DNA from: Scyliorhinus canicula
Lineage: Eukaryota
Assembly: GCF_902713615.1 (NCBI RefSeq)
Contig: NC_052158.1
Coordinates: 12,830,546 to 12,894,545, forward strand
Length of the DNA: 64,000 nt
Reading direction: 5' to 3'
Shown: one piece after another, positions 6,527 to 64,000 of the stretch
Position numbering within the stretch: the first letter of the stretch is position 1
Layout of the letters: each line of letters begins with the position of its first letter
Program-made: the position numbers and the translations under genes
The notes under the pieces: generated by a model
The model's database searches: none
Seen by the model: only the letters and a program-made list of their open reading frames with translations
What the model was told of the DNA's origin: nothing

Positions 6527-9135
6527 CATGGGTAATGCTGAAATATGCAATAATTCCAACTGAATAACAAACAAGGTAACCTACTAACCCCTTTAACTGT
6601 CCCATCCTTGACCAACATAGACAAGACCAACAGACACAGAGGATGTGGTTGGGCGGGAGGTGGGGGAGGGGTGGAAATAGTAAGGACGAAGATCAAAGAT
6701 GAATCTTTGCTTTTAATGGTTATTCTGTAGCAGGCGTTCCTCGCAGAACGTTGGTTGATCAAAGCCTTTGGTACACAGCTGGTGATGGTCTTCTTTGCAG
6801 ACTCATTCAATCAGTACAGTATACAGGCAGCAGGCCTTCTAGAGGGTCACTTTAGTTGTTATCAAACTGGGCCTTCAACTCGAGGCTCGCACTCAGGCTT
6901 ATTTTTTCTTGAGACACTACATTTCACATCAAACCCCTGCTTCCAGCTCCTGGTTTGACGTCATGCCTTTGCAGCCTCGATAAAATGGTACCCAAACTTA
7001 CTGGAAAGAGTGAATGTCCTCATGGTGGCCTTCTGAAGAGAGTTTAGCTGGATCTTCTGGGTGAGAAATAATTAGAACCTCCATTAAAGCTGCAGAATCA
7101 AAAGTGAAACCAAAAACCCTTGAAGCTCTACAACAGTCCAGTGGGGTGAGATCCAATGACCATCTGTTACCGGGCAGAGCACAGCTTTTTGGGCCAATTC
7201 GTTGGCCAGCAGCACATCAATCAAACCAATTCATCACTGAGGCCATCTAATCTCCAATCACCACAGCACAGCCTTATGTATGAATTAAAGGTACAGGTTG
7301 TTTAGCCTTAATTTCACAAGTCCATTAAACATCCAGGGATCAAAAATGCAACAACAAAAATAAGAGAAAGGGGAAACAAGGGATCAAACAAGGAAAACAC
7401 AGGATCAAACAGGAAGGACCTTTACACAATCCTGTTCTCAATGTTTTTGAGATTAGGTGCAATCCTGTTCCATGTCTGAGATCAGTAACAATCCTGTTCC
7501 ATGTTCATGATTAGTAACAATCGTGTTCTGAGTCTGATATTAGTAACAATGCTGTTCCAGGATTAAGAGATTAGTAACAATTCCATTCTACGTTTGAGAT
7601 TAATTACAATCCTGTGCCACGTCTGATATTACTCACAATCCATTTCCATATCTGAGATTAATTACAATTCTGCTGCGTCTGAGATTAATAATAATCGTGT
7701 TCCGTGTCTGAGATTCATAAAAATCCTGTTCCATGCCTGAAATTAGTAACGATCCTGATCCATGTCTGAGATTAGTAACTATCCTGTTCCGAGTCTGAGA
7801 TTAGTAACGATCCTGTTCCGAGTCTGATATTAGTAACAATCCTGCTTCGGGTCTGACATTAATAACAATCCTGCTCCGGGTCTGAGATTAGGAACAATTC
7901 TGTCTAAAATTAGGAACAATCTTGTACCCTGTCAGTGATTATGAACAATCTATTTCCGTGTCTGAGATTAGTAACAACCCTGTTCCTTGTCTGGTCCATT
8001 AAACATCCAGGGATCAAAAATGCAACAACAAAAATAAGAGAAAGGGGAAACAAGGGATCAAACAAGGAAAAAACAGGATCAAACAGGAAGGACCTTTACA
8101 CAATCCTGTTCTCAATGTTTTTGAGATTAGGTGCAATCCTGTTCCATGTCTGAGATCAGTAACAATCCTGTTCCATGTTCATGATTAGTAACAATCGTGT
8201 TCTGAGTCTGATATTAGCAACAATGCTGTTCCATGATTAAGAGATTAGTAACAATTCCATTCTACGTTTGAGATTAATTACAATCCTGTGCCACGTCTGA
8301 TATTACTCACAATCCATTTCCATATCTGAGATTAATTACAATTCTGCTGTGTCTGAGATTAATAATAATCGTGTTCCGTGTCTGAGATTCGTAAAAATCC
8401 TGTTCCATGCCTGAAATTAGTAACGATCCTGATCCATGTCTGAGATTAGTAACTATCCTGTTCCGAGTCTGAGATTAGTAACGATCCTGTTCCGAGTCTG
8501 AGATTATTAACAATCCTGTACCATGTCTGTGATTACTAACAATCCTGCTCTGTGTCTGAGATAAGGAACAATCCATTTCTGTGTGTGAGATTTGTAATAA
8601 TCCAGTTCCGTATTTGTGATGAGCAACAATCCTGTTCCCACTGTTCTTTAAGATTAGTTGTATTCCTGTTCCATGTCTGAGATTAGTAACAATCCTGTTC
8701 TATGTCTGAGATTAGTAACAATCCTGTTCTGTGTCTGAGATTAGTAACAATCCTGCTCCATCTTTGTGATTAGTAACAATCCTGTTCCCACCACTTTTGA
8801 GATTAGTTGCAGTCCTGTTTGATGTATGAGATGAGTAACAATCCTGTTCCATGCCTGAGTTAAGTAACAATCCTGTTGCGTGTCTGATTAGTAACAATTC
8901 TGTCCTGTGTCTGAGTTTAGTAACAATCCTGATCCGTTTAGGAGGTTAGCAACAATCCTGTCCCATATATGAAATCAGTAACAATCAAGTTCTATGTATG
9001 ATATTAATCACAATCCTGTTCCATGTATCAGAGTCGGAACAATTGTGTTCCATGTCAGAAATTAATAACAATACAGTTCCATGTTTAAGGTTAGTAACAA
9101 TCCAGTTCCCTGTATGAGATTAGTAACAATCGTGT

Positions 9136-9870
9136 TTGGCTAATGGTAAGATTCTTGGTAGTGTGGATGAGCAGAGGGATCTCGGTGTCCATGTACATAG
9201 ATCCCTGAAAGTTGCCACCCAGGTTGATAGGGTTGTGAAGAAGGCCTATGGTGTGTTGGCCTTTATTGGTAGAGGGATTGAGTTCCGGAGCCATGAGGTC
9301 ATGTTGCAGTTGTACAAAACTCTAGTACGGCCGCATTTGGAGTATTGCGTACAGTTCTGGTCGCCTCATTATAGGAAGGACGTGGAAGCTTTGGAACGGG
9401 TGCAGAGATTTACCAGGATGTTGCCTGGTATGGAGGGAAAATCTTATGAGGAAAGGCTGATGGACTTGAGGTTGTTTTCGTTAGAGAGAAGAAGGTTAAG
9501 AGGTAACTTAATAGAGGCATACAAAATGATCAGAGGGTTAGATAGGGTGGACAGTGAGAGCCTTCTCCCACGGATGGAGGTGGCTAGGACGAGGGGACAT
9601 AGCCTTAAATTGAGGGGTAATAGATATAGGACAGAGGTCAGAGGTAGGTTTTTTACGCAAAGAGTGGTGAGGCCGTGGAATGCCCTACCTGCAACAGTAG
9701 TGAACTCGCCAACATTGAGGGCATTTAAAAGTTTATTGGATAAGCATATGGATGATAATGGCATAGTGTAGGTTAGATGGCCTTTAGGTTTTGACTTCCC
9801 ATGTCGGTGCAACATCGTGGGCCGAAGGGCCTGCACTGCGCTGTATCATTCTATGTTCTATGTTCTATGT
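9136..9870 (+). mobile_element. CR1 LINE 3' fragment (ORF2 C-terminus and 3' UTR)
   Basis: 211-aa ORF with LVRPHLEYCVQFWSPHYRKD and FFTQRVVRPWNALP; (TTCTATG)n tail. Confidence 0.92.
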
Positions 9871-12075: not shown

Positions 12076-13314
12076 CTAGGGAATCACCACGTTGATCTCG
12101 GCCAGCTTGCTCTCAGTGGAGTTCTTGCCGGTGGTCTTGCCATGTTGGTCACGCAGGTGGACCCGCAGGGTGTTGTAGTGGGTGAAGCGCATGTCGCAGT
12201 AGTTGCAGCAATGGGGCGAGTCGCCGCTGTGTACATTCATGTGGTCCTTGAGCGAGCGGTTCTGGGTGAATGTCTTGCCGCAGATGGCGCAGCAGTACGG
12301 CTTGAAGCCGGTGTGCACGTTGATGTGCTGGGCCAGCCGAGCGTTCTTCTTGAAGACCTTGCCGCACAGCAGGCACATGTAGAGCTTGTGGACCACCATG
12401 TGGGCGGCCAGGTGCTCGCGGTGCTCAAAGGGAGCGCCGCACTCGGAGCAGTGCACTGGCTCGGGTCGCCCGGGGGCTTCTGCCCTGGTGCCTGCTGCTG
12501 ACGCCGACTCTTCCCCGGGCCGGTAGAAGCCACCATAGAAGCCACCGGTGCGGTACTCCTCGCTGGCCGAGCTCTCGTAGTCTTCCTCTTCCTGCAGCTC
12601 TTCCTGAACCACTACGAATCCCTCGTCCTCCATCCCCTCGGCCTTGGCACGCTCCGGATAACCCAGGGCCCCTTCGCAACCCCGGCTGCCCTCTACCGTG
12701 GAGTGTATGCGACAGTCAGTCTCCAGGTAGGCAGCAGCGCCTTCCTGCTCTCCGGGGAGACCCGGGTGTGCCGGCTCAGTCTCCACCTTTACTGGCTCAC
12801 CTCCGGGCACTGCACCCTTGCCCGTCGGCCAGCCAGGGAGGCTCTCCGGCTCGGACGCTAGCCGTTCTGAGGAGCTGGCGATCTGCGGTGTGCCTGGGCG
12901 CCCTTCCCCCTCGCCCTCCTCGGTGATCAGCGAGGCCACACAAGGCGACAGCGACTGCCGGCACTTCTCCACCACGTGCTCCATCTGGAGGCAACTGGCC
13001 GCCGTCAGGTAGTCCACGATATCCCGGAATGGGAATTCCAGCCTCCCAGTATAGCAGGAAAGCAACAGTTGCAGCACCACCTCCGATGCAGCCATGGGGA
13101 AGACCTGCACCTCTTGCGAGGGGTTCATGTGGAAGCGGTCCCTCAGGAAGGGGGAGCAGGCTGCCAGCACCACCCGGTGCCCGGGGAACCGCAGTCCCCC
13201 CACCAGAATGGTCACATCGCAGAACCACTCCTCCAAACGCAGCTCGTTCATCTTCTTCATCGTTGCCCCATCATGGTCGGGAAATTGGAATCGCAACAGC
13301 TTCCCCGTCGCCAT
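12076..13314 (-). CDS. ZBTB12: ZBTB12-like BTB/POZ zinc-finger protein, copy 1 (412 aa, single coding exon)
   Basis: BTB domain ([36 protein letters not shown]...LLLSCYTG...[17 protein letters not shown]), four C2H2 fingers, and ZBTB12-type C-terminus QHGKTT...AEINVVIP. The start is placed at ATG 13314 because a polypyrimidine/CAG acceptor (13327-13326) lies 11 nt upstream. Some finger residues resemble ZBTB26. Confidence 0.85.
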
Positions 13315-13477
13315 CGTTCTCCCAGCTGAAAGGGGAAAGATAGATGGAAGTTTTAGGATGTTGTTAGGTTGCATTGTTGCTACGCAGGTATCGGACGGTG
13401 GAAAGCCAACTGACCACGTAAAGATTCTCCTTCATTTATAGCAGCGCAAGGCTGAGGGCCGAGTTGATGGATAATTC

Positions 13478-15639: not shown

Positions 15640-15999
15640 GAGCAGTCCCTCGGGGTTGAAGATGACTTGCTTTTACTGCGCAGAGTTGGGTTCTGCAGTG
15701 ACTGAATAGTCCAATCCTGATCCACAGACTCTGCCACAGGTTTGGCAGGTGGTGTTTGATGGATGGTGGAACGCTCTATATTATGCATTCTCCTTCCACT
15801 GTTTACGCATGGCCTCAGCTGGCTCCACCCTGTGACGTTAAAAGGGATTGATGCATTCATGGAATGCTTCTCCAGTTCTTAGGCAAGGGATTCCCACTTG
15901 GTGATGGGGATGTTGCAATTATTTAGGGAGGCTTTCAGAGTGGCCTTGTAGGGTTCCCTCTGACATCCTCGTGATCGCTCTCCATTGCGGAGCTCAGAG
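15640..15999 (-). mobile_element. RTE-clade LINE 3' fragment
   Basis: Translates to SELRNGERSRGCQREPYKATLKASLNNCNIPITKWESLA, resembling the RTE ORF C-terminus. Confidence 0.7.
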
Positions 16000-16950
16000 T
16001 CCTCCCTCAGTACTGACCCTCTCACAAGGTAGCACTCCCTCAGTGCTGACCCTCTGACAGTGCAGCACTCCCTCAGTACTGACCCTCTGACAATGCAGCA
16101 CTCCTTCAGTACTGACCCTCTGACAATGCAGCACTCCCTCAGTACTGACCCTCTGACAGCGCAGCACTCCCTCAGTACTGACCCTCTGACAATGCAGCAC
16201 TCCCTCAGTACTGACCCTCTGACAAGGCAGCCCTCCCTCAGTACAGACCCTCTGACAGTGCAGCACTCCCTCAGTACTGACCCTCTGACAGTGCAGCCCT
16301 CCCTCAGTACTGACCCTCTGACAAGGTAGCCCTCCCTCAGTACAGACCCTCTGACAGTGCAGCACTCCCTCAGTACTGACCCTCTGACAAGGCAGTCCTC
16401 CCTCAGTACAGACCCTCTGACAGTGCAGCACTCCCTCAGTACTGACCCTCTGACAGTGCAGCACTCCCTCAATACTGACCCTCTGACAGTGCAGCACTCC
16501 CTCAGTACTGACCCTCTGACAGTGCAGCACTCCCTCAGTCCTGACCCTCTAACAGTGCAGCACTCCCTCAGTACTGACCAACAGTGCAGCACTCCCTCAG
16601 TACTGACCCTCTGAAAGTGCAGCCCTCCCTCAGTACTGACACTCCAACAGTGCAGCACTCCCTCAGTACTGATCCTCCGACAGTGCAGCACCCTCAGTAC
16701 TGACCCTCTGACAGTGCAGCACTCCCTCAGTCCTGACCCTCTCACAGTGCAGCACTCCCTCAGTACTGACCCTCCAACAGTGCAGCACTCCCTCAGTACT
16801 GACCCTCTGAAAGTGCAGCCCTCCCTCAGTACTGACACTCCGACAGTGCAGTGCTACTTCAGTACTGACCCTCCAACAGTGCAGCACTCCCTCAGTACTG
16901 ACCCTCTGACAGTTCAGCACTCCCCCAGTCCTGACCTAACAGTACAGCAG
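16000..16950. repeat. 33-bp minisatellite (~28 copies)
   Basis: Unit CAGTACTGACCCTCTGACAGTGCAGCACTCCCT. Confidence 0.95.
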
Positions 16951-16983
16951 TCTCTATCTACTGCATATGTCAGCCTAGAGTAT

Positions 16984-18468
16984 GGCCGGAAATCTCCATT
17001 TGGAAGTCTAATTGTTCCCGTCGAGACTGAATTGCATGTGATCCATGTTTCCATTGGGGGTATTCGGTAGCAAGTCAGGACATGCAAAGAGGCCAGCACT
17101 CTGCCAACAATAATTAAAATCAACTCCTGCCCCAGCGGGTGTTGTAACCGCTGAGGCCGGAATTAGAGCCAAAGAGACTGACGGCTGGCACTTTTTAAGC
17201 GCTCCACTTACCACACACTCACTGCAGCCACAAAGATCTGCCCCCTGAGATCAGGGGTCTGAGAAGGACCCACTGCTCCATGTCTGTGAGAAGAGGAGGG
17301 ACACCCTCTTCCCCAGGGTGGGCCGCAGACTGAAGCCCACCCTCCTGAATGGCATCTGAGGGGTGGTGTTTGAGGCAGTCAGCGCTGCCAGCCTCACCAG
17401 GAGGAGATAGGCCGTGATCCTGAGGTGTGGGGGTCACCGGTGAGGTCTCTGCCCTGAGAGGGGCGGAGAACCAGGGAGGTTTTCAAAGGCCACAGTGCAG
17501 GTGTCTTTGGTTTGGAGTGAGCTCTGCTGGTCCCCTGCTTCCTCTGCAGTGGGGCAGGGCTTCTGAGGAACACCAATAACCGGTGGGCCACTCTCATCCA
17601 CTTGATGACACAGCTGAGGTTTGAGGGTTTCCCGAGGGACAGCCTGGTTCGGCTCCCAGATGACCAGTGGCTCTCTGGACATTTACAGGACACAATGAGC
17701 ACTCAGCAGTCTGGAGGTGGCACCAAAGGAGTGTGTTTAAATCACATTCTGCAGCAATGGAGTTCTGAGCCAAGTCACCCAGGTCCTGAGGTGGACACCC
17801 CGAGTCCACGAGGACCAAGTTGTTCCCTGCTACTGGCCTCGGCCCGCGCAGCCACCTCCTCAAAAACACCGACAATCTTTGAGGCTTTTTCAGAGTTTTT
17901 TTTAGCCTTCCGCCCCCCCTCCGCCAAAGAGGCATGGAGCATCGTGGGGAAGGGGAGGGCGGGGGGGGGGGGGGGGGGGGGGGGGGGTGGAGCATGGAGT
18001 GTCCAAAACCATACATTATATTGAAATCCATACAATTGATGGTTTGCATGGTCTCGCTGGCACGGGACACAAGCTTTCATTTATTTGTTTTTAAAAAAAT
18101 TTTTAATTTAGAGTACGCAATTAATTTTTTCCAATTAAGGGGCAATTTAGCGTGGCCAATCCACCTATCCTGCACATCTTTGGGTTGTGGGGGCGAAACC
18201 CACACAGACACGGGGAGAATATGCAAACTCCACACGGACAGTGACTCAGAGCCGGGATCGAACCTGTGACCTCGGCGCCGTGAGGCAGCAGGGCTAACCC
18301 ACTGCGCCACCGAGCTGCCCTGACACAAGCTTTGATAACGCCAGCGAGGGACTGGAGCACGGTGCCAGAATCGGCTCCGGGTACAAAACAGATTTATTTT
18401 CCATTTCCAGCAATTCTCCACCTGATCACAATTCCAGCTGCCGGCACTCGAGGCGAAGAATTTGGCCC
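16984..18468. mobile_element. Possible non-autonomous DNA transposon (PIF/Harbinger-like termini) with nested SINE
   Basis: Starts GGCCGGAAATCTCC and ends GAAGAATTTGGCCC (imperfect inverted match), similar to the termini at 24558-25135. No clear TSD. Confidence 0.35.
18078..18321 (-). mobile_element. tRNA-derived SINE with 12-bp TSD
   Basis: TSD GACACAAGCTTT at 18066-18077 and 18322-18333. Confidence 0.9.
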
Positions 18469-50305: not shown

Positions 50306-51629
50306 GAAGCGAATATCTTGAAGCCTTTTTGTCAGTGGCCTCAAGGATACTAATGGGCAGCATTACATTGAGTTACCACAGTTACTAGGTGGCACATTGG
50401 CGGAGTTTTATATCCAGCTGATGTTCCTCCTAATGTAAACCCAAATCTCCCAGCGTCCTCATTGTGTTGTTGTTACATTCAGTAGTTTTAAAAACCTATT
50501 TGATCACCCCCCAACCTTCTATTTTCAACAGAAAAGAGACTCAGCCTGTCAGTCCCTTCCCGATATCTGTACCCACACTTTTCTTCTATCCTTGTAAATC
50601 TTCTACTTTTTTACAACATGTCAACTAGCAATGTATGCTGCGCTCTTTCGTTGTGGTCCAACCACGGTTCAATACAGGTTTAGTGTAACCTTCCTACTTT
50701 TCAGTTCAGAATTCGGGCTCATATAGGAGAATCACAAAAAAAAAATCCAATCGGGAATTCAGGAGAAACCACTTCACCCCGGAGAGGAGTGAGAATGAGG
50801 AACTCCCACAGGGAGAGATTGAGGCAATTAGCAGAGACTTGTTGAAGGTGAAGTCAGATAAACTCATGAGGGATAAAGCAACAGAAGGATATTTTAATAG
50901 GGACGGTGAAGAGGGTGGTGAAGAACATATAACTAGATGTGCTGCATGGCCTTTTTCTGTGCTTTAATACTTTGTTCAATATTGGGATCATTAAAATCAA
51001 ATTAAAAGTGAAACTTTTTCCAACTGTAGCATGGTTGTCCAGCAGCTGTTGTTACTTGTCTTGCCTCGGGGACTTTACAGCGTAGCATTCTCAAAGCAGA
51101 TGATGGTCTCGCTTGATACTGTCAAGGGCCAGATTAACCCCTTTGGTCACTTCCCATTGCGCAGCTGCTTGGAGCTCCCTCCCCCAACACTAACACTCGC
51201 CCAGCTGAAAGTAGGAAAGTGTGTGATACAAAGGGATGGGGATAAGAACATAAGAACTAGGAGCAGGAGTAGGCCATCTGGCCCTCCGTGCCTGCTCTGC
51301 CATTCAATGAGATCATGGCTGATCTTTTGTGGACTCAGCTCCACTTTCCGGCCCGAACACCATAACCCTTTATTCCTTTTTGGATGTGGAAAGCAGAGAT
51401 CTGGCCTTATCTCTGGGCTGTACGTCGATTGATGTTGGCTTAAAAGGCTGGCTGGAAGGCTCAAAAGCAGAGAAGGGGGCAATGTTCGCATCTCCTCTCA
51501 CTCCAATCTCAGGATTCAAAACCCCCCCCCCCCCCCCAACCCGGATCTCACCCCTGCACAAACCACCCCACCTCTCTATTCCCCCCAACCGCATCTTCAC
51601 CCTAGCCCCCGGACATCGCCCTCACCCCA

Positions 51630-53340
51630 GCCTCTGACCTCGCCCCTCCTCAGACTTCACCCTCGCCCCCTCCTTAGACTCCACCCTCACCCCCTCCTCA
51701 GACTTCACCCTCGCCCATTCCCCGAACTTTCTCCTCCTCAGACTCCACCCTCACCCCCTCCTTAGACTTCACCCTCACCCCCTCCTTAGACTCCACCCTC
51801 ACCCCCTCCTTAGACTCCACCCTCACCCCCTCCTTAGACTTCACCCTCACCCCCTCCTTAGACTTCACACTCACCCCCCCTCATACCTCACCCTCACTCC
51901 TTCCTCAGACTCCAGCCTCATTCCCTCCTCATACCCCAGCGTCACTCCCTCCTCATACCCCAGCCTCACTCCTTCCTCTGACCCCAGCCTCACTGCCTCC
52001 TCAGACTCCAGCCTCACTCCCTCCTCAGACCCCCACCTCACTCCCTCCTCAGACCCCAGCCTCACTCCTTCCTTAGACCCCAGCCTCACTCCTTCCTCAG
52101 ACCCCAGCCTCACTCCTTCCTCAGACCCCAGCCTCACTCCTTCCTCAGACCCCAGCCTCACTCCTTCCTCAGACCCCAGCCTCACTCCTTCCTCAGACCC
52201 CAGCCTCACTCCTTCCTCAGACCCCAGCCTCACTCCTTCCTCAGACCCCAGCCTCACTCCTTCCTCAGACCCCAGCCTCACTCCTTCCTCAGACCCCAGC
52301 CTCACTCCTTCCTCAGACCCCAGCCTCACTCCTTCCTCAGACCCCAGCCTCACTCCTTCCTCAGACCCCAGCCTCACTCCTTCCTCAGACCCCAGCCTCA
52401 CTCCTTCCTCAGACCCCAGCCTCACTCCTTCCTCAGACCCCAGCCTCACTCCTTCCTCAGACCCCAGCCTCACTCCTTCCTCAGACCCCAGCCTCACTCC
52501 TTCCTCAGACCCCAGCCTCACTCCTTCCTCAGACCCCAGCCTCACTCCTTCCTCAGACCCCAGCCTCACTCCTTCCTCAGACCCCAGCCTCACTCCTTCC
52601 TCAGACCCCAGCCTCACTCCTTCCTCAGACCCCAGCCTCACTCCTTCCTCAGACCCCAGCCTCACTCCTTCCTCAGACCCCAGCCTCACTCCTTCCTCAG
52701 ACCCCAGCCTCACTCCTTCCTCAGACCCCAGCCTCACTCCTTCCTCAGACCCCAGCCTCACTCCTTCCTCAGACCCCAGCCTCACTCCTTCCTCAGACCC
52801 CAGCCTCACTCCTTCCTCAGACCCCAGCCTCACTCCTTCCTCAGACCCCCGCCTCACTCCCTCCTCAGACCCCAGCCTCACTCCTTCCTCAGACCCCAGC
52901 CTCACTCCTTCCTCAGACCCCAGCCTCACTCCTTCCTCAGACCCCAGCCTCACTCCCTCCTCTGACCCCGACTCACTCCCTCTGACCCCTGCCTTGCTGC
53001 CACCTCAGACCCCAGCCTCACTCCCTCCTCATATCCCAGCCTCACTCCCTCCTCAGACCCTAGCCTCACTCCCTCCTCAGACCCTAGCCTCACTCCCTCC
53101 TCAGACCCCAGCCTCACTCCCTCCTCAGACCCCAGCCTCACTCCCTCCTCAGACCCCAACCTCACTCCCTCCTCAGATCCCAGCCTCACTCCCTCCTCAG
53201 ACCCCAGCCTCACTCCCTCCTCAGACCCCAACCTCACTCCCTCCTCAGACCCCAACCTCACTCCCTCCTCAGACCCCAACCTCACTCCCTCCTCAGACCC
53301 CAACCTCACTCCTTCCTCAGACCCCACCCTCGCCCCTCAT
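51630..53340. repeat. 24-bp pyrimidine-rich VNTR-type array with a nearly perfect core
   Basis: Unit CCTCAGACCCCAGCCTCACTCCTT, homogeneous from ~52080 to 52940 with degenerate edges. Confidence 0.97.
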
Positions 53341-53491
53341 CAGACTGTCCCAGTCTCCCCTCCTTCTCATGGGCCATTCCTGTCCCAACAGGGTGCCAGG
53401 TTGGAGGAAATGGTGAGGAGAATGAATTAAATTGAAACCAGTTTGTTTTTCTGTTGAAGCATATTCAGGAATTATGCTTGTCTTTATCCAG

Positions 53492-55339: not shown

Positions 55340-56625
55340 TGCTCATCCTCAATTTGCACATTAGTGCAAATGACCAGGCTGAAGCATTTGCAACAATCTT
55401 CAGCCCGACGTGCCGAGTGGATGATCCATTTCAGCTTCGTCTGGAGAGCCCAACATCACAGATGTCAGTCTTCGGTCAATTTGATTAACTCCACATGGGC
55501 GGCACGGTAGGACAATGGTTAGCACTGTTGCTTCACAGCGCCAGGGTCCCGTTCGATTACTGCTTGGGTCACTCTGTGGAGTCTACACCGCCGTGTCTGT
55601 GTGGGTTTCCTCTGGGCACTCTGGTTTCCTCCCACAAGTCCCGAAAGACGTGCTGTTAGGTGATTTGACATTCTGAATTTTCCCTCCGTGTACCTGAACA
55701 GGCGGCGGAATGTGGCGACTAGGGATTTTCACAGTAACCTCATTGCATTGTTAATGTAAGCCTACTTGTGACAATAATTTAAGATTATTATTATTATCAA
55801 GAAATGACTGAAGGCACTGGATAATGCTAGGGCTACAGATCCCTAACAATATTCCGGCAATAGAACTGAAAATCTGTGCTCCAGAACTTGTCGCGACTCT
55901 AGCCAAGCTGTTCCAGTACGGTTACAACACTGGCATCTACCTGGCAAGATGGAAAATTGCCCGGCTATATCCTATACACAAAAAGCAGGACAAATTCAAC
56001 CCGGCCAATTATTTCCCAGTCTGTCTACTCTCCATCATCAGCAAAGTGATGGAAGGGGTCATCGACAGTGCTATCAAGCTGCACTTACTCAGCAATAACC
56101 TGCTCACGGACACTCAGTTTGGGTTCTGCCAGGATCACTCATCTGGACCTCATCAGAGCCTTGGTTCAGACATGGACAAAAGAGCTGAGCTCCAGAGGTG
56201 AGGGGAGAGTGACAGTCGTTGGCATCAAGGCAGCATCTGATCGAGAATGGCATCAAGGAGCCTGAGCAAAACTGGAGTCAATGTGAATCGAGGTGGGGGT
56301 GGAGGGGAGACACTCCGCTGGTTGGAGTCATACCTGGCACTAACGAAGATGGCTGCAGATGTTGGAGGTCAGTCATTTCAATCCCGGGACATCGCTGCAG
56401 GAGTTCCTCAGGGTAATGTCCCTGACCTGACCATCTTCACCTGCTTCATCAATGACCTCCCTTCCAACATAGGATCAGAAATGGGGATGTTCGCTGATTA
56501 CTGCACAATGTTCAGCACCATTCGCGTCTCCGCAGATACTGAAGCAGTCCATGTCCAAATGCAGCAAGACCTGGCAATGTGCCAGGCAATGACCATCTCC
56601 CAACAAGAGAGAACCTAATCATCTC
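55340..56625 (+). mobile_element. CR1-like LINE RT fragment with nested SINE (55497-55797)
   Basis: WKIARLYPIHKKQDKFNPANYFPVCLLSIISKVME...QFGF; GVPQGNV...FINDL...MFADY. Confidence 0.8.
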
Positions 56626-57804
56626 CCCATAATAATAATCTTTATTGTCACAAGAAGGCTCACATTGACACTGCAATGAAGTTACTGTGAAAAGCAACTC
56701 CTTACCGTTTCCTACTGCTACTGTGTGTGGTTATGTGAGTGGTGGTGTCCACTAACAGAAAAATTTCAGGCTCCCTATTTCTTCTCCAGCCCTATAACCC
56801 ACCAAAATCCTGGCACTCTTTCAATTCTGGCCTCTTGACTAACCCCAGTTATAATTGCTCCAACATTGGTGGTCATACCTTCAGCTGCACAGGCCCTAAA
56901 CTCTGGACTGCCCTCACTAAATCTCTCTGTCTCCCTTTTGTCCTTCAATTCCTTTACTCTGACCAAACGTTTAGTCATCTGTCCTAATATCTCCTCGTGG
57001 GTCAGTGGGTTCCTTTGGACATTTTACCTCAGACTTTACTTTGGCTGTTTACATACAAAAGCAAATTGTTTCTTATTCATTCATGAGACTTGAGCATCGC
57101 TGGCTAGGCCAGCATTTATTGCCCCTCCCTAATTGCCCTTGAGAAGATGGTGGTGAGCTGACTTTATGAACCGCTGCAGTCCCTGAGGTGTAGGTACAGT
57201 CACCGTGCTGTCAGTGAGGGAGTTCCAGGGTTTTGACCCAAATGTTGATGTGATGCTGAGGTTGTACTAAAAGGGAAAGAGTGAACAGGCCAGGGACCCT
57301 TTTCTCTAGAAAAGGGAAGACGGAGGGATGACCTGATCGAGGTCTTCAAAGGTATGAAAGAATTTGATAGAATAGACATAGGGAAGTCATTCCTACTGGC
57401 GGGCAGGGACCATCAATATAAGATGAATACAACAGGAGTAGTGGGAATATAAAACTCTATCACGCAGAGCGGTTGAGGTGAATAGTATAGATACCTTTAA
57501 AGGGAAGCTGGGTAAACAGGAGGGAGAAAAGAACGGAAGGATAAGTTGATGGAATGAGATGAAGGAGGGGCGTGAGGAGGCTTGTGTGAAGATTAAACAC
57601 CAGCATGGATCAGTTGGGTGGAAAGGCTGGTTTCTGAGCTGTGAACACTTTTGCAATGGAGAGTGCGGTTTGTTAATTTGACGCGTTTCCTTGCTCATCG
57701 CAACCGTCATGCCTCGGGACACTCACCCTTGCTCGAATGTGCGGTGGGAGGTGGGAAGTGCAATGCAACCCGGGAAATAAATGTGGCGTGGTTTTATTTT
57801 GCAG

Positions 57805-58134
57805 GGATCGGCGAAGCAGCAGAACTGTCCCCCAAGAAACTGGGGCAAGTGTCAAATCCCGTGGCGGGTGCTGTAGGTGCAATGGGAAACATCGCCTTGC
57901 AGAATAACGCTGAGGTACCGTGCTCTGGGACCAGCCAAGAGATCGCGGCGAAGGCCCCTGATCCTGAAACCGCGACGGTTACAGATGCCCGAGGGGAAGA
58001 GTCGGCAAGCAGCGGCGAAGCACAGGGCAAATCTGGTGAGCCCTATCTGGGCTCGGAGTGCTCGTCCTCTGATGGTGCAGCTGTCAGCCGGCTGGGATCT
58101 CAACCCGGACCTCTTCCTGTCAAGGGCCTCTCAG
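57805..58134 (+). CDS. EHMT2: EHMT2 coding exon 3 (low-complexity N-terminal region)
   Basis: Acceptor TTTTATTTTGCAG, donor CAG|GTAACT, 330 nt, phase 1->1, open frame. Confidence 0.75.
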
Positions 58135-58744
58135 GTAACTATTCCCTGGTGTTTACGTCACCTCGGTTGTAAGTAGGTTGTCCAAGAGATATGTGGTGGC
58201 AGGGAGAACTTTGGGAATCCTCATGGAGTCAGTAAGTAACAATTGGGGGCAGGGGGGGGGGGTTGACAGCCGGGGCCTTCGCTTTAATTGACAAGAATCA
58301 GACGGGGTGAGGTGTCACGTTCTTTGACGCAGCAGAATGTTGTGGTCCAAAATAGCCGGCACTCTACAATTCTGACCTCTTGTGCATCCCAGATTCTATT
58401 TGCTCCACAATTGGCTTTCAGTTACCCGGGCCCTAAAAGCCCTGGGATTGCCTCCCTAAAACCCCTCCTCTTTTCTCTTTTAAGGCCTCCTCAAAACCAA
58501 TGTGGCTCTGTCAGATTTTAAAGTGCCTTGGGGCATTTTACTGCTTTGAAGACATGATACAACTGCAACTTGTTGTTGAAAGACTCGTGGGAGCAGATTC
58601 AACAATAGCTTTCAATGGAGGTTTGGGTGAATATTTGGAAGAGCAAAATGAAATTGTCGGACTAAGGGGAAGGAGCAGAAGAGGGGATTTCGAAGGGTTC
58701 AATGATCTCTTCTTGCCCTCTTCACTTGGATTTCAATTGGATTG

Positions 58745-59755
58745 GGTTGGATTTTGTTTGTTGCCACGTGTACCGAGGTACAGTGAAAAGTATTTTTCTG
58801 CGAGCAGCTCAACAGATCATCAAGTACATGAAAAGGAAATAAAAGAAAATACATAATAGGGCAACACAAGGTAAACAATGTAACTACATAACACCGACAT
58901 CAGGTGAAGCATACAGGGTGTAGTGTTAATGAGGTCAGTCCATAACAGGGTGTTTAGGAGTTTGGTAACAGCGGGGAGGATGCTGTTTTTGAGTCTGTTT
59001 GTGCGTTTTCTCAGACTTCTGTATCTCCTGCCCAATGGAAGAAGTTGGAAGAGTGAGTAAGCCGGGCGGGAGGGGTCTTTGATTATGCTGCCCGCTTTCC
59101 CCTGGCAGCGGGAGGTGTGGATGGAGTCAATGGATGGGAGGCAGGTTCGTGTGATAGACTGGGCTGTGTTCACGATTCTCTGAAGTCTTGCGGTTTTGGG
59201 CCGAGCAGTTACCATACCAGGCTGTGATGCAGCCAAATAGGATGCTTTCTATGGTGCATCTGTAAAAGTTGGTAAGAGTTAATGCGGACATGCCGAATTT
59301 CCTTAGTTTCCTGAGGCACTACAGGCGCTGCTGTGCTTTCTTGGTGATAGCGTCGACGTGGGTGGACCAGGACAGATTTTTGGCGATGTGCACCCCAAGG
59401 AATTTGATACTGCTAACCATCTCTACCTTGAGCCGTTGATGCTGACAGGGGTGTGTACAGGACTTTGCTTTCTGACGTTAATGGCCAGCTCTTTAGTTTT
59501 GCTGGAATTAAGGGAGAGATTGTTGTCGCTGCACCACTCCACTAGGTTCTCTATCTCCCTCCTGTATTCTGACTCGTCATTATTCGAGATCCGGCCGACT
59601 ATGGTCGTATCGTCAGCAAACTTGGAGATGGAGTTGGAACCGAATTTTGCCACGCAGTCATGTGTGTATAGGGAGTATCGTAGGGGGCTAAGTACATAGC
59701 CTTGCGGGGTCCCGGTATTGAGGCCTAGTGTGGAGGTGATGTTGTTTATTCTTAC
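58745..59755 (-). mobile_element. Rex1/Babar-clade LINE 3' portion
   Basis: SKFADDTTIVGRISNNDESEYRREIENLVEWCSDNNLSLNSSKTKE; LLPLGRRYRSL. Confidence 0.88.
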
Positions 59756-59811
59756 TGATTGTTAACTGTTCTTAACTGATTCTCACTTGTATTGATGATT
59801 TCTTCCCTCAG

Positions 59812-60071
59812 GTCATGCTGCCAAAACATTCCCCGCCTCCCCCACCAAGGCCCCAGGGGCCAACAGGGCTAAGATGACACTAACCGGGGTCAGCAAGTCT
59901 CCAAATTCCATTCAGAGCCTTGCCATGAAACTGCTGAGTGTGCCGACCGGCCGGGCAGGGAATGAGGTAGCGGCGGTCCCGGTGGAGGCGCAGAGGCCGG
60001 TGGCAGCTCCGGACGACAAGCCCAAGATCCACAAAGCTCGGAAGTCGATATCCAGATCCAGCGCCAGTCAG
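59812..60071 (+). CDS. EHMT2: EHMT2 coding exon 4 with the H3K9-mimic motif
   Basis: GHAAKTFPASPTK...RAKMTLTGVSKSPNSIQSLAMKLLSVP...KPKIHKARKSISRSSASQ aligns with recalled G9a GHATKSFPSSPSK...RAKMSMTGAGKSPPSVQSLAMRLLSMP...QPKVHRARKTMSK. Acceptor TTCTTCCCTCAG, donor CAG|GTACCG, 260 nt. Confidence 0.92.
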
Positions 60072-60284
60072 GTACCGAAGGGGGTGGTCTGCCTATGAGC
60101 TGTGCTTGCACGGAGGGATGAGCACTTGCATTGCCGCTGCGTTTGCCCCACCTTGGCCAGGCTGTGAGGATGAGGAGGGCGATGAGCTGAGGAAAAGTCG
60201 CTTGTCCCTTAAATCCTGTGACTCAAAGATGAGAGGAGTGGTCACAACTGACACGAGTGCAAAAGCCAGACTCACCCTCCCTGT

Positions 60285-60580
60285 ACTGCACTGAGGTGGT
60301 GCTGTCTGTCAGATGAGATGTTAAATTGAGGCCCCCATTTGCCTACTTGAGTGGATGTTAAAAAAAAAAAAATCCCTTGACACTATTTTGAGAAAGAGCA
60401 GGGGAGTTTTCTCCGGTGTCCTGGCTAATATTTATCCCTCAAATTAACATTACAGTAACACTATCTGGTCATTATCGCATTGTTATTTGTGGGAGCTTGC
60501 TGTGAGTAAATTAGCTGCTGCCTTTCCTACGATACAACAGTTTGAAAAGTATCGGCTGTAAAGGGCTTGCTGAGGTAGTA
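60285..60580 (+). mobile_element. DeuSINE (SacSINE1/AmnSINE-like) fragment
   Basis: AGATGAGATGTTAAA...GAAAGAGCAGGGGAGTT...GGTGTCCTGGCTAATATTTATCCCTCAA...TGTGGGAGCTTGCTGTG core. Confidence 0.7.
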
Positions 60581-60801
60581 AAAGATTCCCCATAACCAGC
60601 CTGGATGGTGCCAAGGAAATTTGGGATTTGCATGACGAGGGGTGGATGTGGACAAGAAAATGTGACCTGAGATTGCTTGCACTAGATTTTTGCGTTCTTA
60701 ACTCGGCAGCCATTCAGTTAAAGCTCACTTTGCTCAAAAATATTGCATCCCCCCCCCCCCACCCAAAAAAAATTCTCCTCTTCTTTGCGGCTTTTACACA
60801 G

Positions 60802-60954
60802 AGATTGCCTACAGAACTGGGGACCTTGCCCACCGACCGGGCAAGCCAGGCTCCTGGAGCGGCGGCAGAAGTGGAGCACGTAGTCCCGGCTCAGGACGAG
60901 AATCAAGAGGTGCACAGAGCAAGGAAGTCGATACTGAAAGGCAGCTTCAGTCAG
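60802..60954 (+). CDS. EHMT2: EHMT2 extra exon A (duplicate of the exon 4 3' half; second ARKS)
   Basis: Acceptor CTTTTACACAG, donor CAG|GTACGG, 153 nt, phase 0-0; RLPTELGTLPTDRA...QDENQEVHRARKSILKGSFSQ. Confidence 0.8.
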
Positions 60955-61446
60955 GTACGGTGAGCGTGGACCCCTTTGGACCGGCCAGCCAGCTATAGTA
61001 AATAAGGGGAAGCTGACGTGTGCTGTCTTGCCAGTTTTTTTAAAAAAAAGTATCTCCCACCCGAAAGCCTCTTCGGAATTAACACCCCAACTGCTCCCTG
61101 ACGGCCGTCTCACACTTTGGGTGAGTTTTGAGATTGCTCTGAGTTTGGAGGCACGACCAGTAACCCTGCTGTTGCCGTCCCACCAGTTCACTCTTCTCCG
61201 TGTGTGTGTCTCTCTCATGACCCACAAGGAAGAAGACTCCAGTCCTACTTGTAGGTGGCCATTCGGCCCATTTTCATATTGACTTGATGGCATTTGTTTG
61301 GGTTGGGGAGGAGGCGGAGATGGAGAATTGGGCCAGCAGACAGCAGGGAGCAACACGCTAAAGGTCTCGATGGCAAATGACAGGTGAGTAGGTATGCCAG
61401 GAGCTCCTTGAGCATCTTTCCCCGCATGCACTGCTGCTGTGTGCTC

Positions 61447-61755
61447 GGGCAGCATGGTTGCACAATGGTTAGCACTGTTGCTTCACAGAGCCAGGGTCCC
61501 ATGTTCGATTCCTGGCTTGGGTCACTGTCTGTGCGGAGTCTGTACATTCACCCTGTGTCTGCGTGGGTTTCCTCCGGGTGTTCCAGTTTCCTCCCACAAT
61601 TCTCGAAAGACATGCTGTTTGCTGAATTGGACATTCTGAATTCTCCCCGTGTACCTGAACAGGCGCCGGAATGTGACGACGAGGGGCTTTTCACAGTAAC
61701 TTCATTGCAGTGTTAATGTAAGCCTACTTGCGACAATAAAGATTATTTATTTATA
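61447..61755 (+). mobile_element. tRNA-derived SINE
   Basis: Head, core and GACAATAAAGATTATT tail. Confidence 0.85.
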
Positions 61756-61929
61756 TTTGTAGTAAAATGGAGAAGAGTATACAATTCTTGAGCTCCTTGG
61801 ACGGATGAGCAACAGTCTGTCCTTCCCTGGGCTGGCTTGTCCCCTTCTTAAAATTTCACTTTCAATCCTGGTGTAAACGCAGCTTTTCTTGGCAGGTTGC
61901 TTCGTGGTGCGGTTGTTCGCGGCTCTAGT

Positions 61930-62310
61930 CATGGCCCAGTGGGTAGCACTCTCTCTTCCTGTGTGCTATAAGTCGCCCTCCTCGGTTCCAGTACAGGGGA
62001 AAAGCTGCATTGTCAGGGATGCCATCAATCGAGGGAGCCTTGCTTCTGCCCCCTCAGGTGGTTGTGACAGATCCACCATTTGGAAAGAGAGCGGGGGAAT
62101 TTTCCCTGCTGCCCAGATCCAATATTTATCCCTTAACCAACACCACGAAAGGCCGTTATCATATTACTGTTTGTGGGGAGTTTACTGTGCACAAACTCCT
62201 GCCACATTTCCTACATTACAACCGTCACTACATTTCAGAAAGGACTTCATTGGCTGTAAAGCCATTTGGGACATTTTGAGGCTGTGAAAGGCGCTCTGTA
62301 AATGCATCGC
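61930..62310 (+). mobile_element. DeuSINE-like fragment
   Basis: Similar to 60285-60580; ends TTGGCTGTAAAGC...GTGAAAGGCGCTCTGTAAATGCA. Confidence 0.65.
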
Positions 62311-62868
62311 CGCCTTCTTGAAGCCTATCAGTCGCCTTTTACTACCCCTAATGCTCCTTTTAACTGCCGCCGGGTACTTGAATAGAAGCGTACATTTGAC
62401 TAAATCTGCCTCTTCTGCAGAAAGCTGGATTTTATTAAGTGCAGTGTGATTATAACACTGCTAACAGCTCCAAGGGCAGCACGGTAGCACAGTGATTGGC
62501 ACAGTTGCTTCACAGCTCCAGGGTCACGGGTTCGATTCCCAGCTTGGGCCACTTGCCTGTGCGGAGTCGGCAGCTTCTTCCCGTGTCTGTTCTTTCCAAG
62601 AGCCGGTGCAGACTCGATGGGCCGAATGGCCTCCTTGTGCACTGTAAATTCTATGATTCAATGAACAGCTTTTTGTGAAGTGGATGGGGCGGATTACGTG
62701 TCAAAGTTGCACTTTTTGGGTGGTTTGGTGCAGTGGGAGGTATAAAATGGTGAACACGCACAAATAGTCCCATTGGCAGCAAGTCCGCCATTGTGTGTGA
62801 AGCAAAGTATTCCATTCCGCGACATCCGATTGCTTGTTTGTGACTGATTTATGCCTCACTCCACACAG

Positions 62869-63018
62869 AGCTTGGCGGAGAAGTTGGCGAGCTTGCCCAT
62901 TGGACGGGCAGTTGGTGATGCTGCTGGGGGAACGGCAGAGCAGGCCGCACAGCCTCAAGACGAGAACCAGGATGTTCACCGAGCCAGAAAGTCCATCCTG
63001 AAAGGCCCCTTCAGTCAG
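62869..63018 (+). CDS. EHMT2: EHMT2 extra exon B (duplicate of the exon 4 3' half; third ARKS)
   Basis: Acceptor CTCCACACAG, donor CAG|GTAAAG, 150 nt, phase 0-0; SLAEKLASLPIGRA...QDENQDVHRARKSILKGPFSQ. Confidence 0.82.
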
Positions 63019-63329
63019 GTAAAGAGAGAAAAGCCCTCACTTAGCTTTTGCAAATTGATGGCCAAATCGGAAAAATATTAAAATGCTGGGGTGATTACGG
63101 TCTCCATTATAATTGTGTAAATAAGGGACTTCAAACTTTACGGCAGAGGTAGACAGATTCTTCACTAACAAAGCAGTCAAGGGATACGGGGAGGAGGGGG
63201 GACGGATGGCGTAGGTAAGATTGTGTTGAGGCCACAATCAGTTCAGCTGTTATTGAACTTTGGGGAAGGTTCCTGTTTCTAATTTGGATGTTCATTTGCA
63301 CACAAGAGGCTGATTGGAAGATTTAATAC

Positions 63330-64000
63330 CCTCCTCGCTCTGCCCCTCCCCTCCTCGCTCTGCCCCTGCCCCCCTCGCTCTGCCCCTGCCCCCTCGCTCT
63401 GCCCCTCCCCACCTGCTCTGCCCCTCCCCCCTCGCTCTGCCCCTCCCCTCCTCCCTCGCTCTGCCCCTCCTCCCTCGCTCTGCCCCTCCCCTCTTCGCTC
63501 TGCCCATCCCCACTCGCTCTGCCCCTTGCCCCTCCCCCTCGCTCTGCCCTCCCCCTCGCTCTGCCCCCCCCTCGCTCTGCCCCCCCCTCGCTCTGCCCCT
63601 CCCCCTCGCTCTGCCCCTCCCCCTCGCTCTGCCCCTCCCCCTCGCTCTGCCCCTCCCCCTCGCTCTGGCCCCCCCCCCTCGCTCTGCCCCTCCCCCTCGC
63701 TCTGCCCCTCCCCTCGCTCTCTGCCCCTCCCCTCGCTCTGCCCCTCCCCTCGCTCTGCCCCTCCCCCTCGCTCTGCCCCTCCCCCTCGCGCTGCCCCTCC
63801 CCCTCGCTCGCCCCCCCTCGCTCTCCCCCTCCCCCTCGCTCTGCCCCTCCCCCTCGCTCTGCCCCTCCCCCTCGCTCTGCCCTCCCCCTCGCTCTGCCCC
63901 TCCCCCTACTCGCTCTGCCCCTCCCCCTCGCTCTGCTGCCCCTCCCCCTCGCTCTGGGCCCCTCCCCCTCGCATCTGCCCCTCCCCCTCGCATCTGCCCC
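63330..64000. repeat. ~18-bp C-rich tandem repeat, runs off the right edge
   Basis: Unit CCTCGCTCTGCCCCTCCC(CC). Confidence 0.95.

What the first reader, a model, noticed from the sequence alone, without database searches (positions are those of the whole stretch)
59901..62870. New splice acceptors appear to be a recycled coding Gln codon (partial-exon duplication)
Seen: the extra exons correspond only to the last 156 nt of exon 4, starting right after an internal CAG codon (cca aat tcc att CAG|agc ctt gcc, P-N-S-I-Q|S-L-A; CAG at 59913-59915). Exon B's acceptor reads cct cac tcc aca CAG|agc ttg gcg (P-H-S-T-Q|S-L-A) and exon A's reads gct ttt aca CAG|aga ttg cct. Inference: former coding sequence became intron and the Gln CAG became the 3' splice site. 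Exons A and B share QDENQ.VHRARKSILKG.FSQ, so one arose from the other after a first duplication from exon 4.
Basis: partly seen in the sequence, partly recalled or inferred. Interest (0 to 1): 0.7.

Follow-up and report, generated by a model that had tools for sequence, protein, structure and literature searches.

The report
Shark G9a exons reuse a codon
In a catshark's EHMT2/G9a gene, extra copies of the end of exon 4 are spliced in at an AG that matches an in-frame Gln codon inside exon 4, so the claim that coding sequence was recycled into a splice acceptor holds up as a well-documented example of a known way of building repeats.

Summary
Exon 4 (59812-60071) is followed by two phase 0-0 exons, A (60802-60954) and B (62869-63018). 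Both are homologous only to the last 156 nt of exon 4 and start exactly where that stretch starts, just after the CAG at 59913-59915.

RNA contigs from three studies join 60071|60802 and 60954|62869 with GT..AG ends. The translations match RefSeq Scyliorhinus canicula EHMT2-like exactly, so these exons are already annotated.

- The 13 nt before exon B's acceptor resemble the 13 coding nt before the exon-4 CAG. Matches are 7/13 in this window (p=0.045), 8/13 in Chiloscyllium (p=0.006) and 10/13 in Heptranchias (p=0.0002, reading P-N-S-T-Q).
- Exon A shows only a weak trace of this, and exons C and D show none.
- The exon-4 coding sequence has a CTAAC branch-point-like motif and a 65% pyrimidine tract before the CAG, so it could act as a latent acceptor.
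- The array has five units, not three. Units C and D lie beyond the window.
- All 14 elasmobranch species sampled keep all five units. Coelacanth and mammals have one.
- The unit tree suggests one acceptor birth, then serial exon duplication before sharks and rays split.
- I could not tell whether the first copy began inside exon 4 or included all of it.

Interest is modest.

The parts
57805..58134 (+). EHMT2 exon 3. It ends in phase 1, and its last G plus the GT of exon 4 make a Gly codon.
   Evidence: AG|..|GT borders. Joint 58134|59812 in RNA contigs of 3 studies. Translation is exact in RefSeq S. canicula EHMT2-like.
59812..60071 (+). EHMT2 exon 4, the parent exon. Its head (59812-59915) is unique. 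Its tail (59916-60071, 156 nt) is repeat unit 1 and carries K-A-R-K-S.
   Evidence: The tail groups with the single unit of coelacanth and mammals (100/97) in the unit tree.
59880..59884 (+). CTAAC inside the coding sequence (codons for T-L-T), about 32 nt before the internal AG. It matches the branch-point consensus, so it could serve as a latent branch point.
   Evidence: The pyrimidine fraction at -20..-4 before the CAG is 0.65, within the range of the real acceptors here (0.59-0.76).
59900..59915 (+). Coding P-N-S-I-Q stretch ending in the Gln codon CAG (59913-59915). The repeat unit begins right after it.
   Evidence: This is the counterpart of the 13 nt + CAG before exon B.
60799..60801 (+). 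cag acceptor of exon A.
   Evidence: Joint 60071|60802, GT..AG, in 3 contig runs and 1 raw read.
60802..60954 (+). Exon A, repeat unit 2. It is 153 nt, phase 0-0, and carries H-R-A-R-K-S-I-L-K.
62853..62868 (+). Intronic remnant of the coding sequence (13 nt, reads P-H-S-T in frame) plus the cag acceptor of exon B.
   Evidence: 7/13 matches to the window's exon 4 (p=0.045) and 9/13 to Heptranchias or Chiloscyllium exon 4 (p=0.001-0.002). The stretch is conserved among three shark orders.
62869..63018 (+). Exon B, repeat unit 3. It is 150 nt, phase 0-0, and carries H-R-A-R-K-S-I-L-K. Its mRNA continues about 3.2 kb into exons beyond the window.

Best explanation
The window holds the 5' part of the catshark EHMT2 (G9a) gene. 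In an ancestor of sharks and rays, a tandem genomic duplication copied the 3' part of exon 4 together with its donor site and some downstream intron.

The copy also carried at least about 13 nt, probably more, of coding sequence upstream of an in-frame Gln codon (CAG). That coding stretch already looked like a 3' splice site: it has a CTAAC branch-point-like motif, a moderately pyrimidine-rich tract and a CAG.

The CAG sits on a codon border and exon 4 ends in phase 0. Splicing from the exon-4 donor to this AG therefore inserts a 52-codon, in-frame unit. The upstream codons became intron and the Gln CAG became the acceptor.

The new exon, now with its own acceptor, was then duplicated serially as a whole exon. 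This gave four extra exons in the order exon 4-A-B-C-D, with A and B the youngest pair. Each unit carries one H3K9-like H-R-A-R-K-S motif, and all five units are included in the mRNA.

What is shown: the exon borders, the splicing, the homology, the five-unit array in 14 species, and the similarity upstream of exon B. What is inferred: that the acceptor arose only once, the order of the duplications, and that the latent site was competent when the duplication happened.
For: Gene identity:
- The exon-4 peptide hits elasmobranch EHMT2 proteins and mammalian G9a-like fragments.
- The exon 3, 4, A and B translations are exact in S. canicula EHMT2-like, a gene model with EHMT1-2_CRR, Ank and Pre-SET domains listed; SET (PF00856) is recorded for its 90% cluster representative P0034.
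- A BTB-ZF neighbour is conserved.

Splicing: the joints 60071|60802 and 60954|62869 have GT..AG ends in contigs of 3 studies.

Homology begins at the first exonic base, and the preceding NAG is kept in every unit of 5 genomes (CAG, or TAG in two Heptranchias units).

Similarity upstream of exon B to the exon-4 codons: 10/13 (p=0.0002), 8/13 (p=0.006) and 7/13 (p=0.045). The null was 4847 acceptor-like sites. A right-anchored score test gave p=0.0013.

Latent site: CTAAC lies about 32 nt upstream and the tract is 65% pyrimidine.

The parent exon is undivided in mammals. Gene-model fragments P0005, P0006 and P0008 read through both flanking introns but are continuous across S-V-Q|S-L-A. Coelacanth and mammals have one unit.

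Unit tree: A, C and D are clades by position. Support is (A,B) 96/83, (A,B,C) 99/85, and exon-4 tail with the outgroups 100/97.

All 57 full-length isoforms from 14 species carry five ARKS motifs.
Against: - Upstream similarity is significant only for exon B, and only in sharks. Skates are not significant. Exon A is marginal in one species. Exons C and D show nothing.
- The three shark values are not independent, because the exon-B flanks are orthologous.
- Exon B is not the earliest-branching unit, so its better-preserved remnant needs either chance retention under splice-site constraint or later gene conversion from exon 4.
- Concerted evolution among units does occur. Heptranchias A and B are 92.6% identical over 175 nt including intron, and ray B units group with A units.
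- No homology is detectable further upstream, so the 5' breakpoint is unmapped.
- Use of CAG 59915 as an acceptor was not seen.
- No holocephalan or ray-finned fish sequence was obtained, so the direction (gain in the elasmobranch line versus loss in bony vertebrates) rests on parsimony.
Confidence: 0.72

Rival explanations
1. Whole-exon duplication with later intron loss. Under this reading the repeat unit was once a separate exon preceded by a phase-0 intron at S-I-Q|S-L-A. It duplicated in the ordinary way with its own acceptor, and the intron between the exon-4 head and unit 1 was then lost. The CAG in exon 4 would be the scar of an old exon end rather than the source of the acceptors.
For: Every unit ends in ..Q (CAG)|gt, and the exon-4 head also ends in ..I-Q (CAG). 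The internal site therefore looks like an exon-exon junction.
Against: Mammalian fragments that retain both flanking introns are continuous over S-V-Q|S-L-A, and coelacanth has one unit in one stretch. The intron loss would therefore have to predate the split of bony and cartilaginous fish, and bony vertebrates would also have to lose four exons. This reading does not explain why the intron before exon B matches the exon-4 codons P-N-S-x. The exon-4 head is not detectably related to the units: its HMM score is no better than shuffles.
Confidence: 0.06
2. A new acceptor arising by chance. Under this reading the duplication breakpoint lay at or after the CAG. The acceptors arose afresh from the intron sequence at the junction, and the resemblance of the exon-B flank to P-N-S-I-Q is convergence imposed by splice-site needs.
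For: Exons A, C and D, and exon B in skates, show no significant similarity upstream. The matching stretch lies in the constrained interval between branch point and AG, which is conserved among sharks.
Against: The null set was itself made of pyrimidine-rich [CT]AG sites, and it reached 10/13 matches in only 0.02% of cases. The shared letters include purines (g..aa) that a pyrimidine tract does not call for. A breakpoint falling exactly on an in-frame NAG would be a coincidence.
Confidence: 0.1
3. Secondary gene conversion. Under this reading the acceptor may still go back to the CAG, but the P-N-S-T-Q trace before exon B was written later, in the shark stem, by conversion from exon 4 into exon B. 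It would then not be a relic of the founding duplication.
For: Conversion between units is documented here (Heptranchias A/B; ray B with A). Shark B shares G-R-A-x-G with the exon-4 tail, while ray B shares E-R-x-S-Q with A. The trace is absent in skates.
Against: In the tree, shark B units do not group with the exon-4 tail. The first-half nucleotide identity of B to exon 4 (0.59) is no higher than that of A (0.61) in the window. A conversion tract reaching past the CAG still needs homology there.
Confidence: 0.12

Closest known systems
Tandem exon duplication (ordinary kind: whole exon with both splice sites, as surveyed in animal genes)
   Same: Neighbouring homologous exons have lengths divisible by three and symmetric phase. 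Duplication is serial, and units show concerted evolution.
   Different: The founding copy lacks the first 104 nt of the parent exon and its acceptor. The acceptor maps to an internal codon of the parent. The copies are all included together, not mutually exclusive.
Intron gain by tandem duplication of coding sequence with a proto-splice site, followed by intronization of one copy (model discussed in PMC2891723, Lehmann et al. 2010)
   Same: Duplicated coding sequence supplies a splice signal, and part of a coding copy becomes intron (for the model; for this locus).
   Different: In that model both donor and acceptor come from a duplicated AG|GY motif, and the mRNA is restored. Here only the acceptor comes from coding sequence, the donor is a copy of the native exon-4 donor, and the result is an added exon and a longer protein.
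G9a/GLP automethylation site, the H3K9 'histone mimic' (reviewed in PMC2887955; primary papers Sampath 2007 and Chin 2007 are cited there)
   Same: Same gene and same position in the N-terminal region. The motif is H-R-A-R-K followed by S/T.
   Different: Mammals and coelacanth have one A-R-K-T site. Elasmobranchs have five A-R-K-S sites, one per unit. Methylation of the shark sites was not tested.

Membership tests
EHMT2 / G9a orthologue | The N-terminal exons belong to a protein with cysteine-rich region, ankyrin repeats, pre-SET and SET domains. | tested here: met
   The window's exon 3, 4, A and B translations are exact substrings of RefSeq S. canicula EHMT2-like X1-X3. The X1 gene model lists EHMT1-2_CRR, Ank and Pre-SET among its Pfam hits (list truncated); SET (PF00856) is listed for P0034, the representative of its 90% cluster. 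The domains themselves lie outside the window.
EHMT2 / G9a orthologue | Conserved neighbourhood: a BTB zinc-finger gene next to the 5' end. | tested here: met
   A BTB + C2H2 ORF lies at 12079-13431 on the minus strand. The same neighbour is found in Heptranchias and Amblyraja. Equating it with ZBTB12 rests on my memory of the human map.
Tandem exon duplication | Adjacent exons of one gene are significantly similar, in the same phase, and each is spliced into mRNA. | tested here: met
   E = 1e-9 to 3e-18; joints.
Tandem exon duplication | The copy includes the parent's own acceptor and upstream intron. | tested here: not met
   Homology starts 9-13 nt before the internal CAG, not at the exon-4 acceptor. 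There is no match to 59812-59899 or to intron 3. Decay of an originally longer copy cannot be excluded.
Mutually exclusive or cassette duplicated exons | Alternative inclusion of the copies. | tested here: not met
   Contigs of 3 studies contain 4-A-B in series. All 57 full-length RefSeq isoforms of 14 species keep five units. Rare skipping was not testable, because there were too few raw reads.
Proto-splice-site duplication / intronization | A splice signal of the new intron maps onto parental coding sequence, with residual similarity of the intron flank to those codons. | tested here: met
   The exon starts exactly after the CAG in all units. The exon-B flank matches at 10/13, 8/13 and 7/13 (p=0.0002-0.045). 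This is not met for exons C and D, and is marginal for A.
Proto-splice-site duplication / intronization | Both donor and acceptor derive from one duplicated AG|GY motif, and the mRNA is restored. | tested here: not met
   The internal site is CAG|AG, not AG|GY. The donors are copies of the native exon-4 donor (CAG|gtac in nearly all units). The protein is lengthened.
G9a histone-mimic automethylation site | The lysine in A-R-K-[ST] is methylated by the enzyme itself and bound by HP1-type chromodomains. | not testable with these tools
   Only the motif is seen. The function is known for the mammalian site.

The most novel reading that the evidence does not exclude
A single intronization event turned codons of EHMT2 exon 4 into a splice acceptor. 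This allowed serial exon duplication before sharks and rays split. Elasmobranch G9a would then constitutively carry five automethylatable copies of the H3K9 sequence A-R-K-S, against one A-R-K-T in bony vertebrates. Such an array would form a multivalent methyl-lysine platform for HP1/MPP8-type readers, with different heterochromatin-recruiting behaviour.
Probability: 0.35. Interest if true: 0.6.

Novelty: new member of a known kind. Interest (0 to 1): 0.35.

Why it matters
This is an unusually traceable example of how a repeat-bearing protein segment can be built. The parent exon, the recycled codon, the surviving coding remnant in the intron and the later whole-exon copies can all be seen and dated to before the shark-ray split.

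It shows that a duplication need not include an exon's own acceptor to give a working exon, provided the coding sequence contains a latent in-frame 3' splice site.

The product also matters biologically. It multiplies five-fold the one site through which G9a is known, in mammals, to recruit HP1-type readers.

The exons themselves are already in RefSeq models, and the mechanism combines known processes, so the gain is illustrative rather than conceptual.

Tried and rejected
- My first guess from R-K-S-I-L-K was a PP1-binding SILK motif, as in KNL1.
- Pfam finds nothing in the exon 3 or exon 4 peptides.
- I tested whether the exon-4 head (H-A-A-K..S-I-Q) is an older 'unit 0' related to the repeat. 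An HMM of 72 units scores it no better than 2000 shuffles, so I rejected the idea.
- A possible match of exon B's branch-point region (tgactaat) to the coding ACTAAC with a 12-nt gap cannot be told apart from convergence on the branch-point consensus. I make no claim for it.
- Self-BLAST for homology further upstream or deep in the introns found only transposon and minisatellite repeats. The exceptions were a few bases past the donors and the Heptranchias A/B conversion tract.
- I tried to fetch genomic DNA for S. canicula (units C and D), Heterodontus, Carcharodon and Narcine. No DNA was served for any of them. Non-longest isoforms were not on record.
- Three protein searches found no chimaera or ray-finned fish counterpart of this region. 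That is a blank, not an absence.
- The raw oligo-dT run gave almost no reads on these 5' exons, with one read across 60071|60802. Rare skipping or cryptic use of CAG 59915 therefore could not be assessed.
Full report
**What is in the window.**

The + strand from about 53 kb onward carries the 5' part of a vertebrate gene. SINE and LINE debris fills its introns.
- Exon 3 is 57805-58134 and exon 4 is 59812-60071.
- Exon 4 read in frame gives H-A-A-K-T-F-P-A-S-P-T-K...S-P-N-S-I-Q-S-L-A-M-K-L-L...K-I-H-K-A-R-K-S-I-S-R-S-S-A-S-Q.
- Two more open stretches follow, 60802-60954 (exon A) and 62869-63018 (exon B). Each is preceded by cag and followed by gt. They are 153 and 150 nt long and are read in phase 0-0.

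**Gene identity.**

A full HMMER search with the 86 residues of exon 4 found eight cluster representatives.
- Four are cartilaginous-fish proteins. One is a 1515-residue protein that RefSeq names EHMT2-like (Hemitrygon akajei).
- Four are mammal-type G9a N-terminal fragments (for the names).
- The translations of exons 3, 4, A and B occur without any change in the three RefSeq isoforms of Scyliorhinus canicula EHMT2-like. That gene model lists EHMT1-2_CRR, ankyrin and pre-SET domains. SET is listed for the representative of its 90% cluster.
- A BTB zinc-finger gene lies upstream on the other strand (12079-13431). The same neighbour is present in Heptranchias and Amblyraja.
I tested that here and it holds.

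**The observation.**

- The tail of exon 4 after the CAG at 59913-59915 is 156 nt.
- Codon-aligned nucleotide identity is 63% (tail vs A), 56% (tail vs B) and 67% (A vs B, 77% in the 3' half).
- BLASTN self-comparison gives E = 1e-9 to 3e-18 for these pairs. The alignments stop 6-9 nt before the exons and 4-10 nt after the donors.

**Are the acceptors real?**

I laid Logan contigs from three independent RNA-type studies and one raw run on 57750-63250.
- One contig per study (4185, 576+390 and 2041 nt) joins 58134|59812, 60071|60802 and 60954|62869. All joints have GT..AG ends.
- The longest contig continues 3178 nt beyond exon B, outside the window.
- One raw read crosses 60071|60802.
- No listed joint uses CAG 59915 as an acceptor, and none skips A or B. 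Contigs drop rare forms and the raw run barely covers these exons, so this is silence, not absence.
- A joint 58134|59916 would shift the frame, because 104 nt would be removed. It would be expected to be rare in any case.

The shark and ray proteins carry five H-[RK]-A-R-K-S units in a row: the exon-4 tail and then four extra units.
- In S. canicula, units C (A-H-P-K-R-M...) and D (G-L-T-R-S-R-P...H-R-A-R-K-S-M-F-K-P-N-P-A-Q) follow exon B. They must lie beyond base 64000.
- All 57 full-length isoforms retrieved, from 14 species of sharks and rays, keep all five motifs.
- Ray isoforms differ elsewhere, not in the array.
- Coelacanth EHMT2 and the mammal fragments have a single unit with A-R-K-T.
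- Three mammal fragments read through the introns on both sides of the exon yet are continuous across S-V-Q|S-L-A. The parent exon is therefore undivided there and has the same borders as in the shark.

**History of the units.**

A maximum-likelihood tree of 72 units (52 columns, so limited resolution) was built.
- Units A, C and D are recovered as clades by position across sharks and rays (98/95, 96/95, 100/98).
- A and B are joined (96/83), then C (99/85). D is separate.
- The exon-4 tails group with coelacanth and mammal (100/97).
- The array therefore predates the shark-ray split, and A and B are the youngest pair.
- The tree also means the extra exons most likely go back to one founder copy.
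- Concerted evolution blurs this picture. In Heptranchias the 3' halves of A and B plus 71 nt of intron are 92.6% identical. Ray B units group with A units.

**Is the acceptor a recycled codon?**

I fetched genomic loci for four other species: Heptranchias perlo, Chiloscyllium punctatum, Rhinoraja longicauda and Amblyraja radiata. Five observations bear on the question.

1. In every unit of every genome the exon starts at the base homologous to the one after the exon-4 CAG. It is preceded by CAG, or by TAG in two Heptranchias units. The exception is unit C, where the start has slid in some sharks.

2. The intron before exon B still reads in frame M-P-H-S-T-Q (window), M-P-N-S-T-Q (Heptranchias) and M-P-D-C-T-Q (Chiloscyllium). 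Exon 4 reads S-P-N-S-I-Q.

3. I compared the 13 nt before each acceptor with the 13 nt before the exon-4 CAG of the same genome. The null was 4847 pyrimidine-rich [CT]AG sites from these loci.

| Unit | Genome | Matches | p |
|---|---|---|---|
| B | Heptranchias | 10/13 | 0.0002 |
| B | Chiloscyllium | 8/13 | 0.006 |
| B | window | 7/13 | 0.045 |
| B (window flank vs Heptranchias exon 4) | cross-species | 9/13 | 0.002 |
| B | Rhinoraja, Amblyraja | 6/13, 3/13 | not significant |
| A | Heptranchias only | 7/13 | 0.03 |
| C, D | all genomes | - | not significant |

An earlier right-anchored score test gave p=0.0013 for Heptranchias exon B. A test confined to the window gave p=0.02 at the most favourable length. 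The shark values are not independent, because they are orthologous flanks. After allowing for about 18 tests, the best value still stands.

4. The matching stretch lies in the interval between branch point and AG. That interval is the only part of this intron conserved among the three shark orders. This explains why a remnant could survive so long.

5. The exon-4 coding sequence upstream of the CAG is a plausible latent 3' splice site.
   - CTAAC at 59880-59884 lies about 32 nt before the AG.
   - The pyrimidine fraction at -20..-4 is 65%. The real acceptors in this window range from 59 to 76%.
   - CAG is the only in-frame NAG there with a favoured -3 base.
   - Exon 4 ends in phase 0 and the CAG is a whole codon, so a copy spliced at this AG is automatically in frame.

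**Conclusion on the interpretation.**

The reading that former coding sequence became intron and the Gln CAG became the 3' splice site is the best explanation (about 0.7). Four points need amending.
- The event probably happened once, and the acceptor was then inherited by A, B, C and D through whole-exon duplications.
- It cannot be decided whether the first duplicated segment began inside exon 4 or contained all of it, with splicing then settling on the internal CAG. Nothing upstream of about -13 is recognisable any more.
- The exon-B trace might have been refreshed by gene conversion from exon 4 in the shark stem.
- Gain in the elasmobranch line, rather than loss in bony vertebrates, rests on parsimony. 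No chimaera or ray-finned fish sequence of this region was retrieved.

**Rivals.**
- Whole-exon duplication plus loss of an intron at S-I-Q|S-L-A needs extra events and does not explain the exon-B flank.
- A new acceptor with convergent similarity is made unlikely by the null distribution, which was itself made of acceptor-like sites.
- The idea that the exon-4 head is an older degenerate unit was tested and rejected.

**Comparison with what is known.**

The locus is a tandem exon duplication whose founder lacked the parent's acceptor.
- The nearest described mechanism is intron gain by tandem duplication of coding sequence containing a proto-splice site, with intronization of one copy (PMC2891723).
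- Here only the acceptor is drawn from coding sequence, and the outcome is a new exon rather than a restored mRNA.
- Functionally, each unit repeats the G9a automethylation site that mimics H3K9 and recruits HP1 in mammals (PMC2887955). The sharks have A-R-K-S, the histone's own letters, five times.
- I found no paper on this array. A search for 'EHMT2' with 'elasmobranch' returned one unrelated paper.
- The exons are already present in automatic RefSeq models.

**Verdict.**

This is a new, clean example of known processes. Interest is modest for the splice-site origin itself and higher for the five-fold histone mimic, which is the subject of a separate finding.

Noticed in passing
window 12079-13431 (-); L001 5633-6931 (-); L003 224-1162 (-): A BTB/POZ + C2H2 zinc-finger gene lies head-to-head with EHMT2 in catshark, Heptranchias and Amblyraja. 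The gap to EHMT2 is about 40 kb in the catshark window but only about 3 kb in Heptranchias. From memory of the human MHC class III map, it looks like ZBTB12.
   Followed up: partly
L001 17329-17503 and 19013-19187: In Heptranchias the 3' halves of exons A and B plus 71 nt of the following introns are 92.6% identical. This points to recent gene conversion within the array. Ray B units also group with A units in the unit tree.
   Followed up: partly
unit C of the array (outside the window; L004 16282, L001 19420, L002 20561, L003 26994): The start of unit C differs among species (A-H-P-K-R-M, A-K-R-M, G-T-A-K-R-M, R-M-A-G, G-L-A-K-K-M, A-L-A-M-K). Its acceptor has therefore slid by a few codons in several lineages. 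Heptranchias uses TAG for units C and D.
   Followed up: no
RefSeq names of P0001 and P0002/P0023: N-terminal EHMT2 fragments are misnamed. The Heptranchias one is called 'nucleolar and coiled-body phosphoprotein 1-like, partial'. The two Rhinoraja models are called 'uncharacterized protein'.
   Followed up: no
window 61447-61561 and 62474-62589: Two SINE copies (80% identical) lie in the intron between exons A and B. RNA contig depth on them is enormous, and the many chimeric joints there come from other copies in the genome.
   Followed up: no
window 63340-64000; 51600-53430; 15880-17070: There are three long minisatellites. One is a CT-rich unit (about 17 nt, ...ctcgctctgcccctccc...) in the intron after exon B. 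One is a unit that reads as P/S/L-rich peptide in all frames. One reads as ...TVRGSVLRECC... . The first would block read-laying past 63.3 kb.
   Followed up: no
window 58820-59760 (-), 55810-56620 (+), 9127-9768 (+), 3570-5110 (+): Reverse-transcriptase-like open stretches (LINE fragments) are present. One fills most of intron 3, right up to about 50 nt before the exon-4 acceptor.
   Followed up: no
window 58027, 59998, 60029: Single-letter differences occur in exonic RNA contigs of different studies (G>A, C>T, C>T). They are probably alleles among individuals.
   Followed up: no
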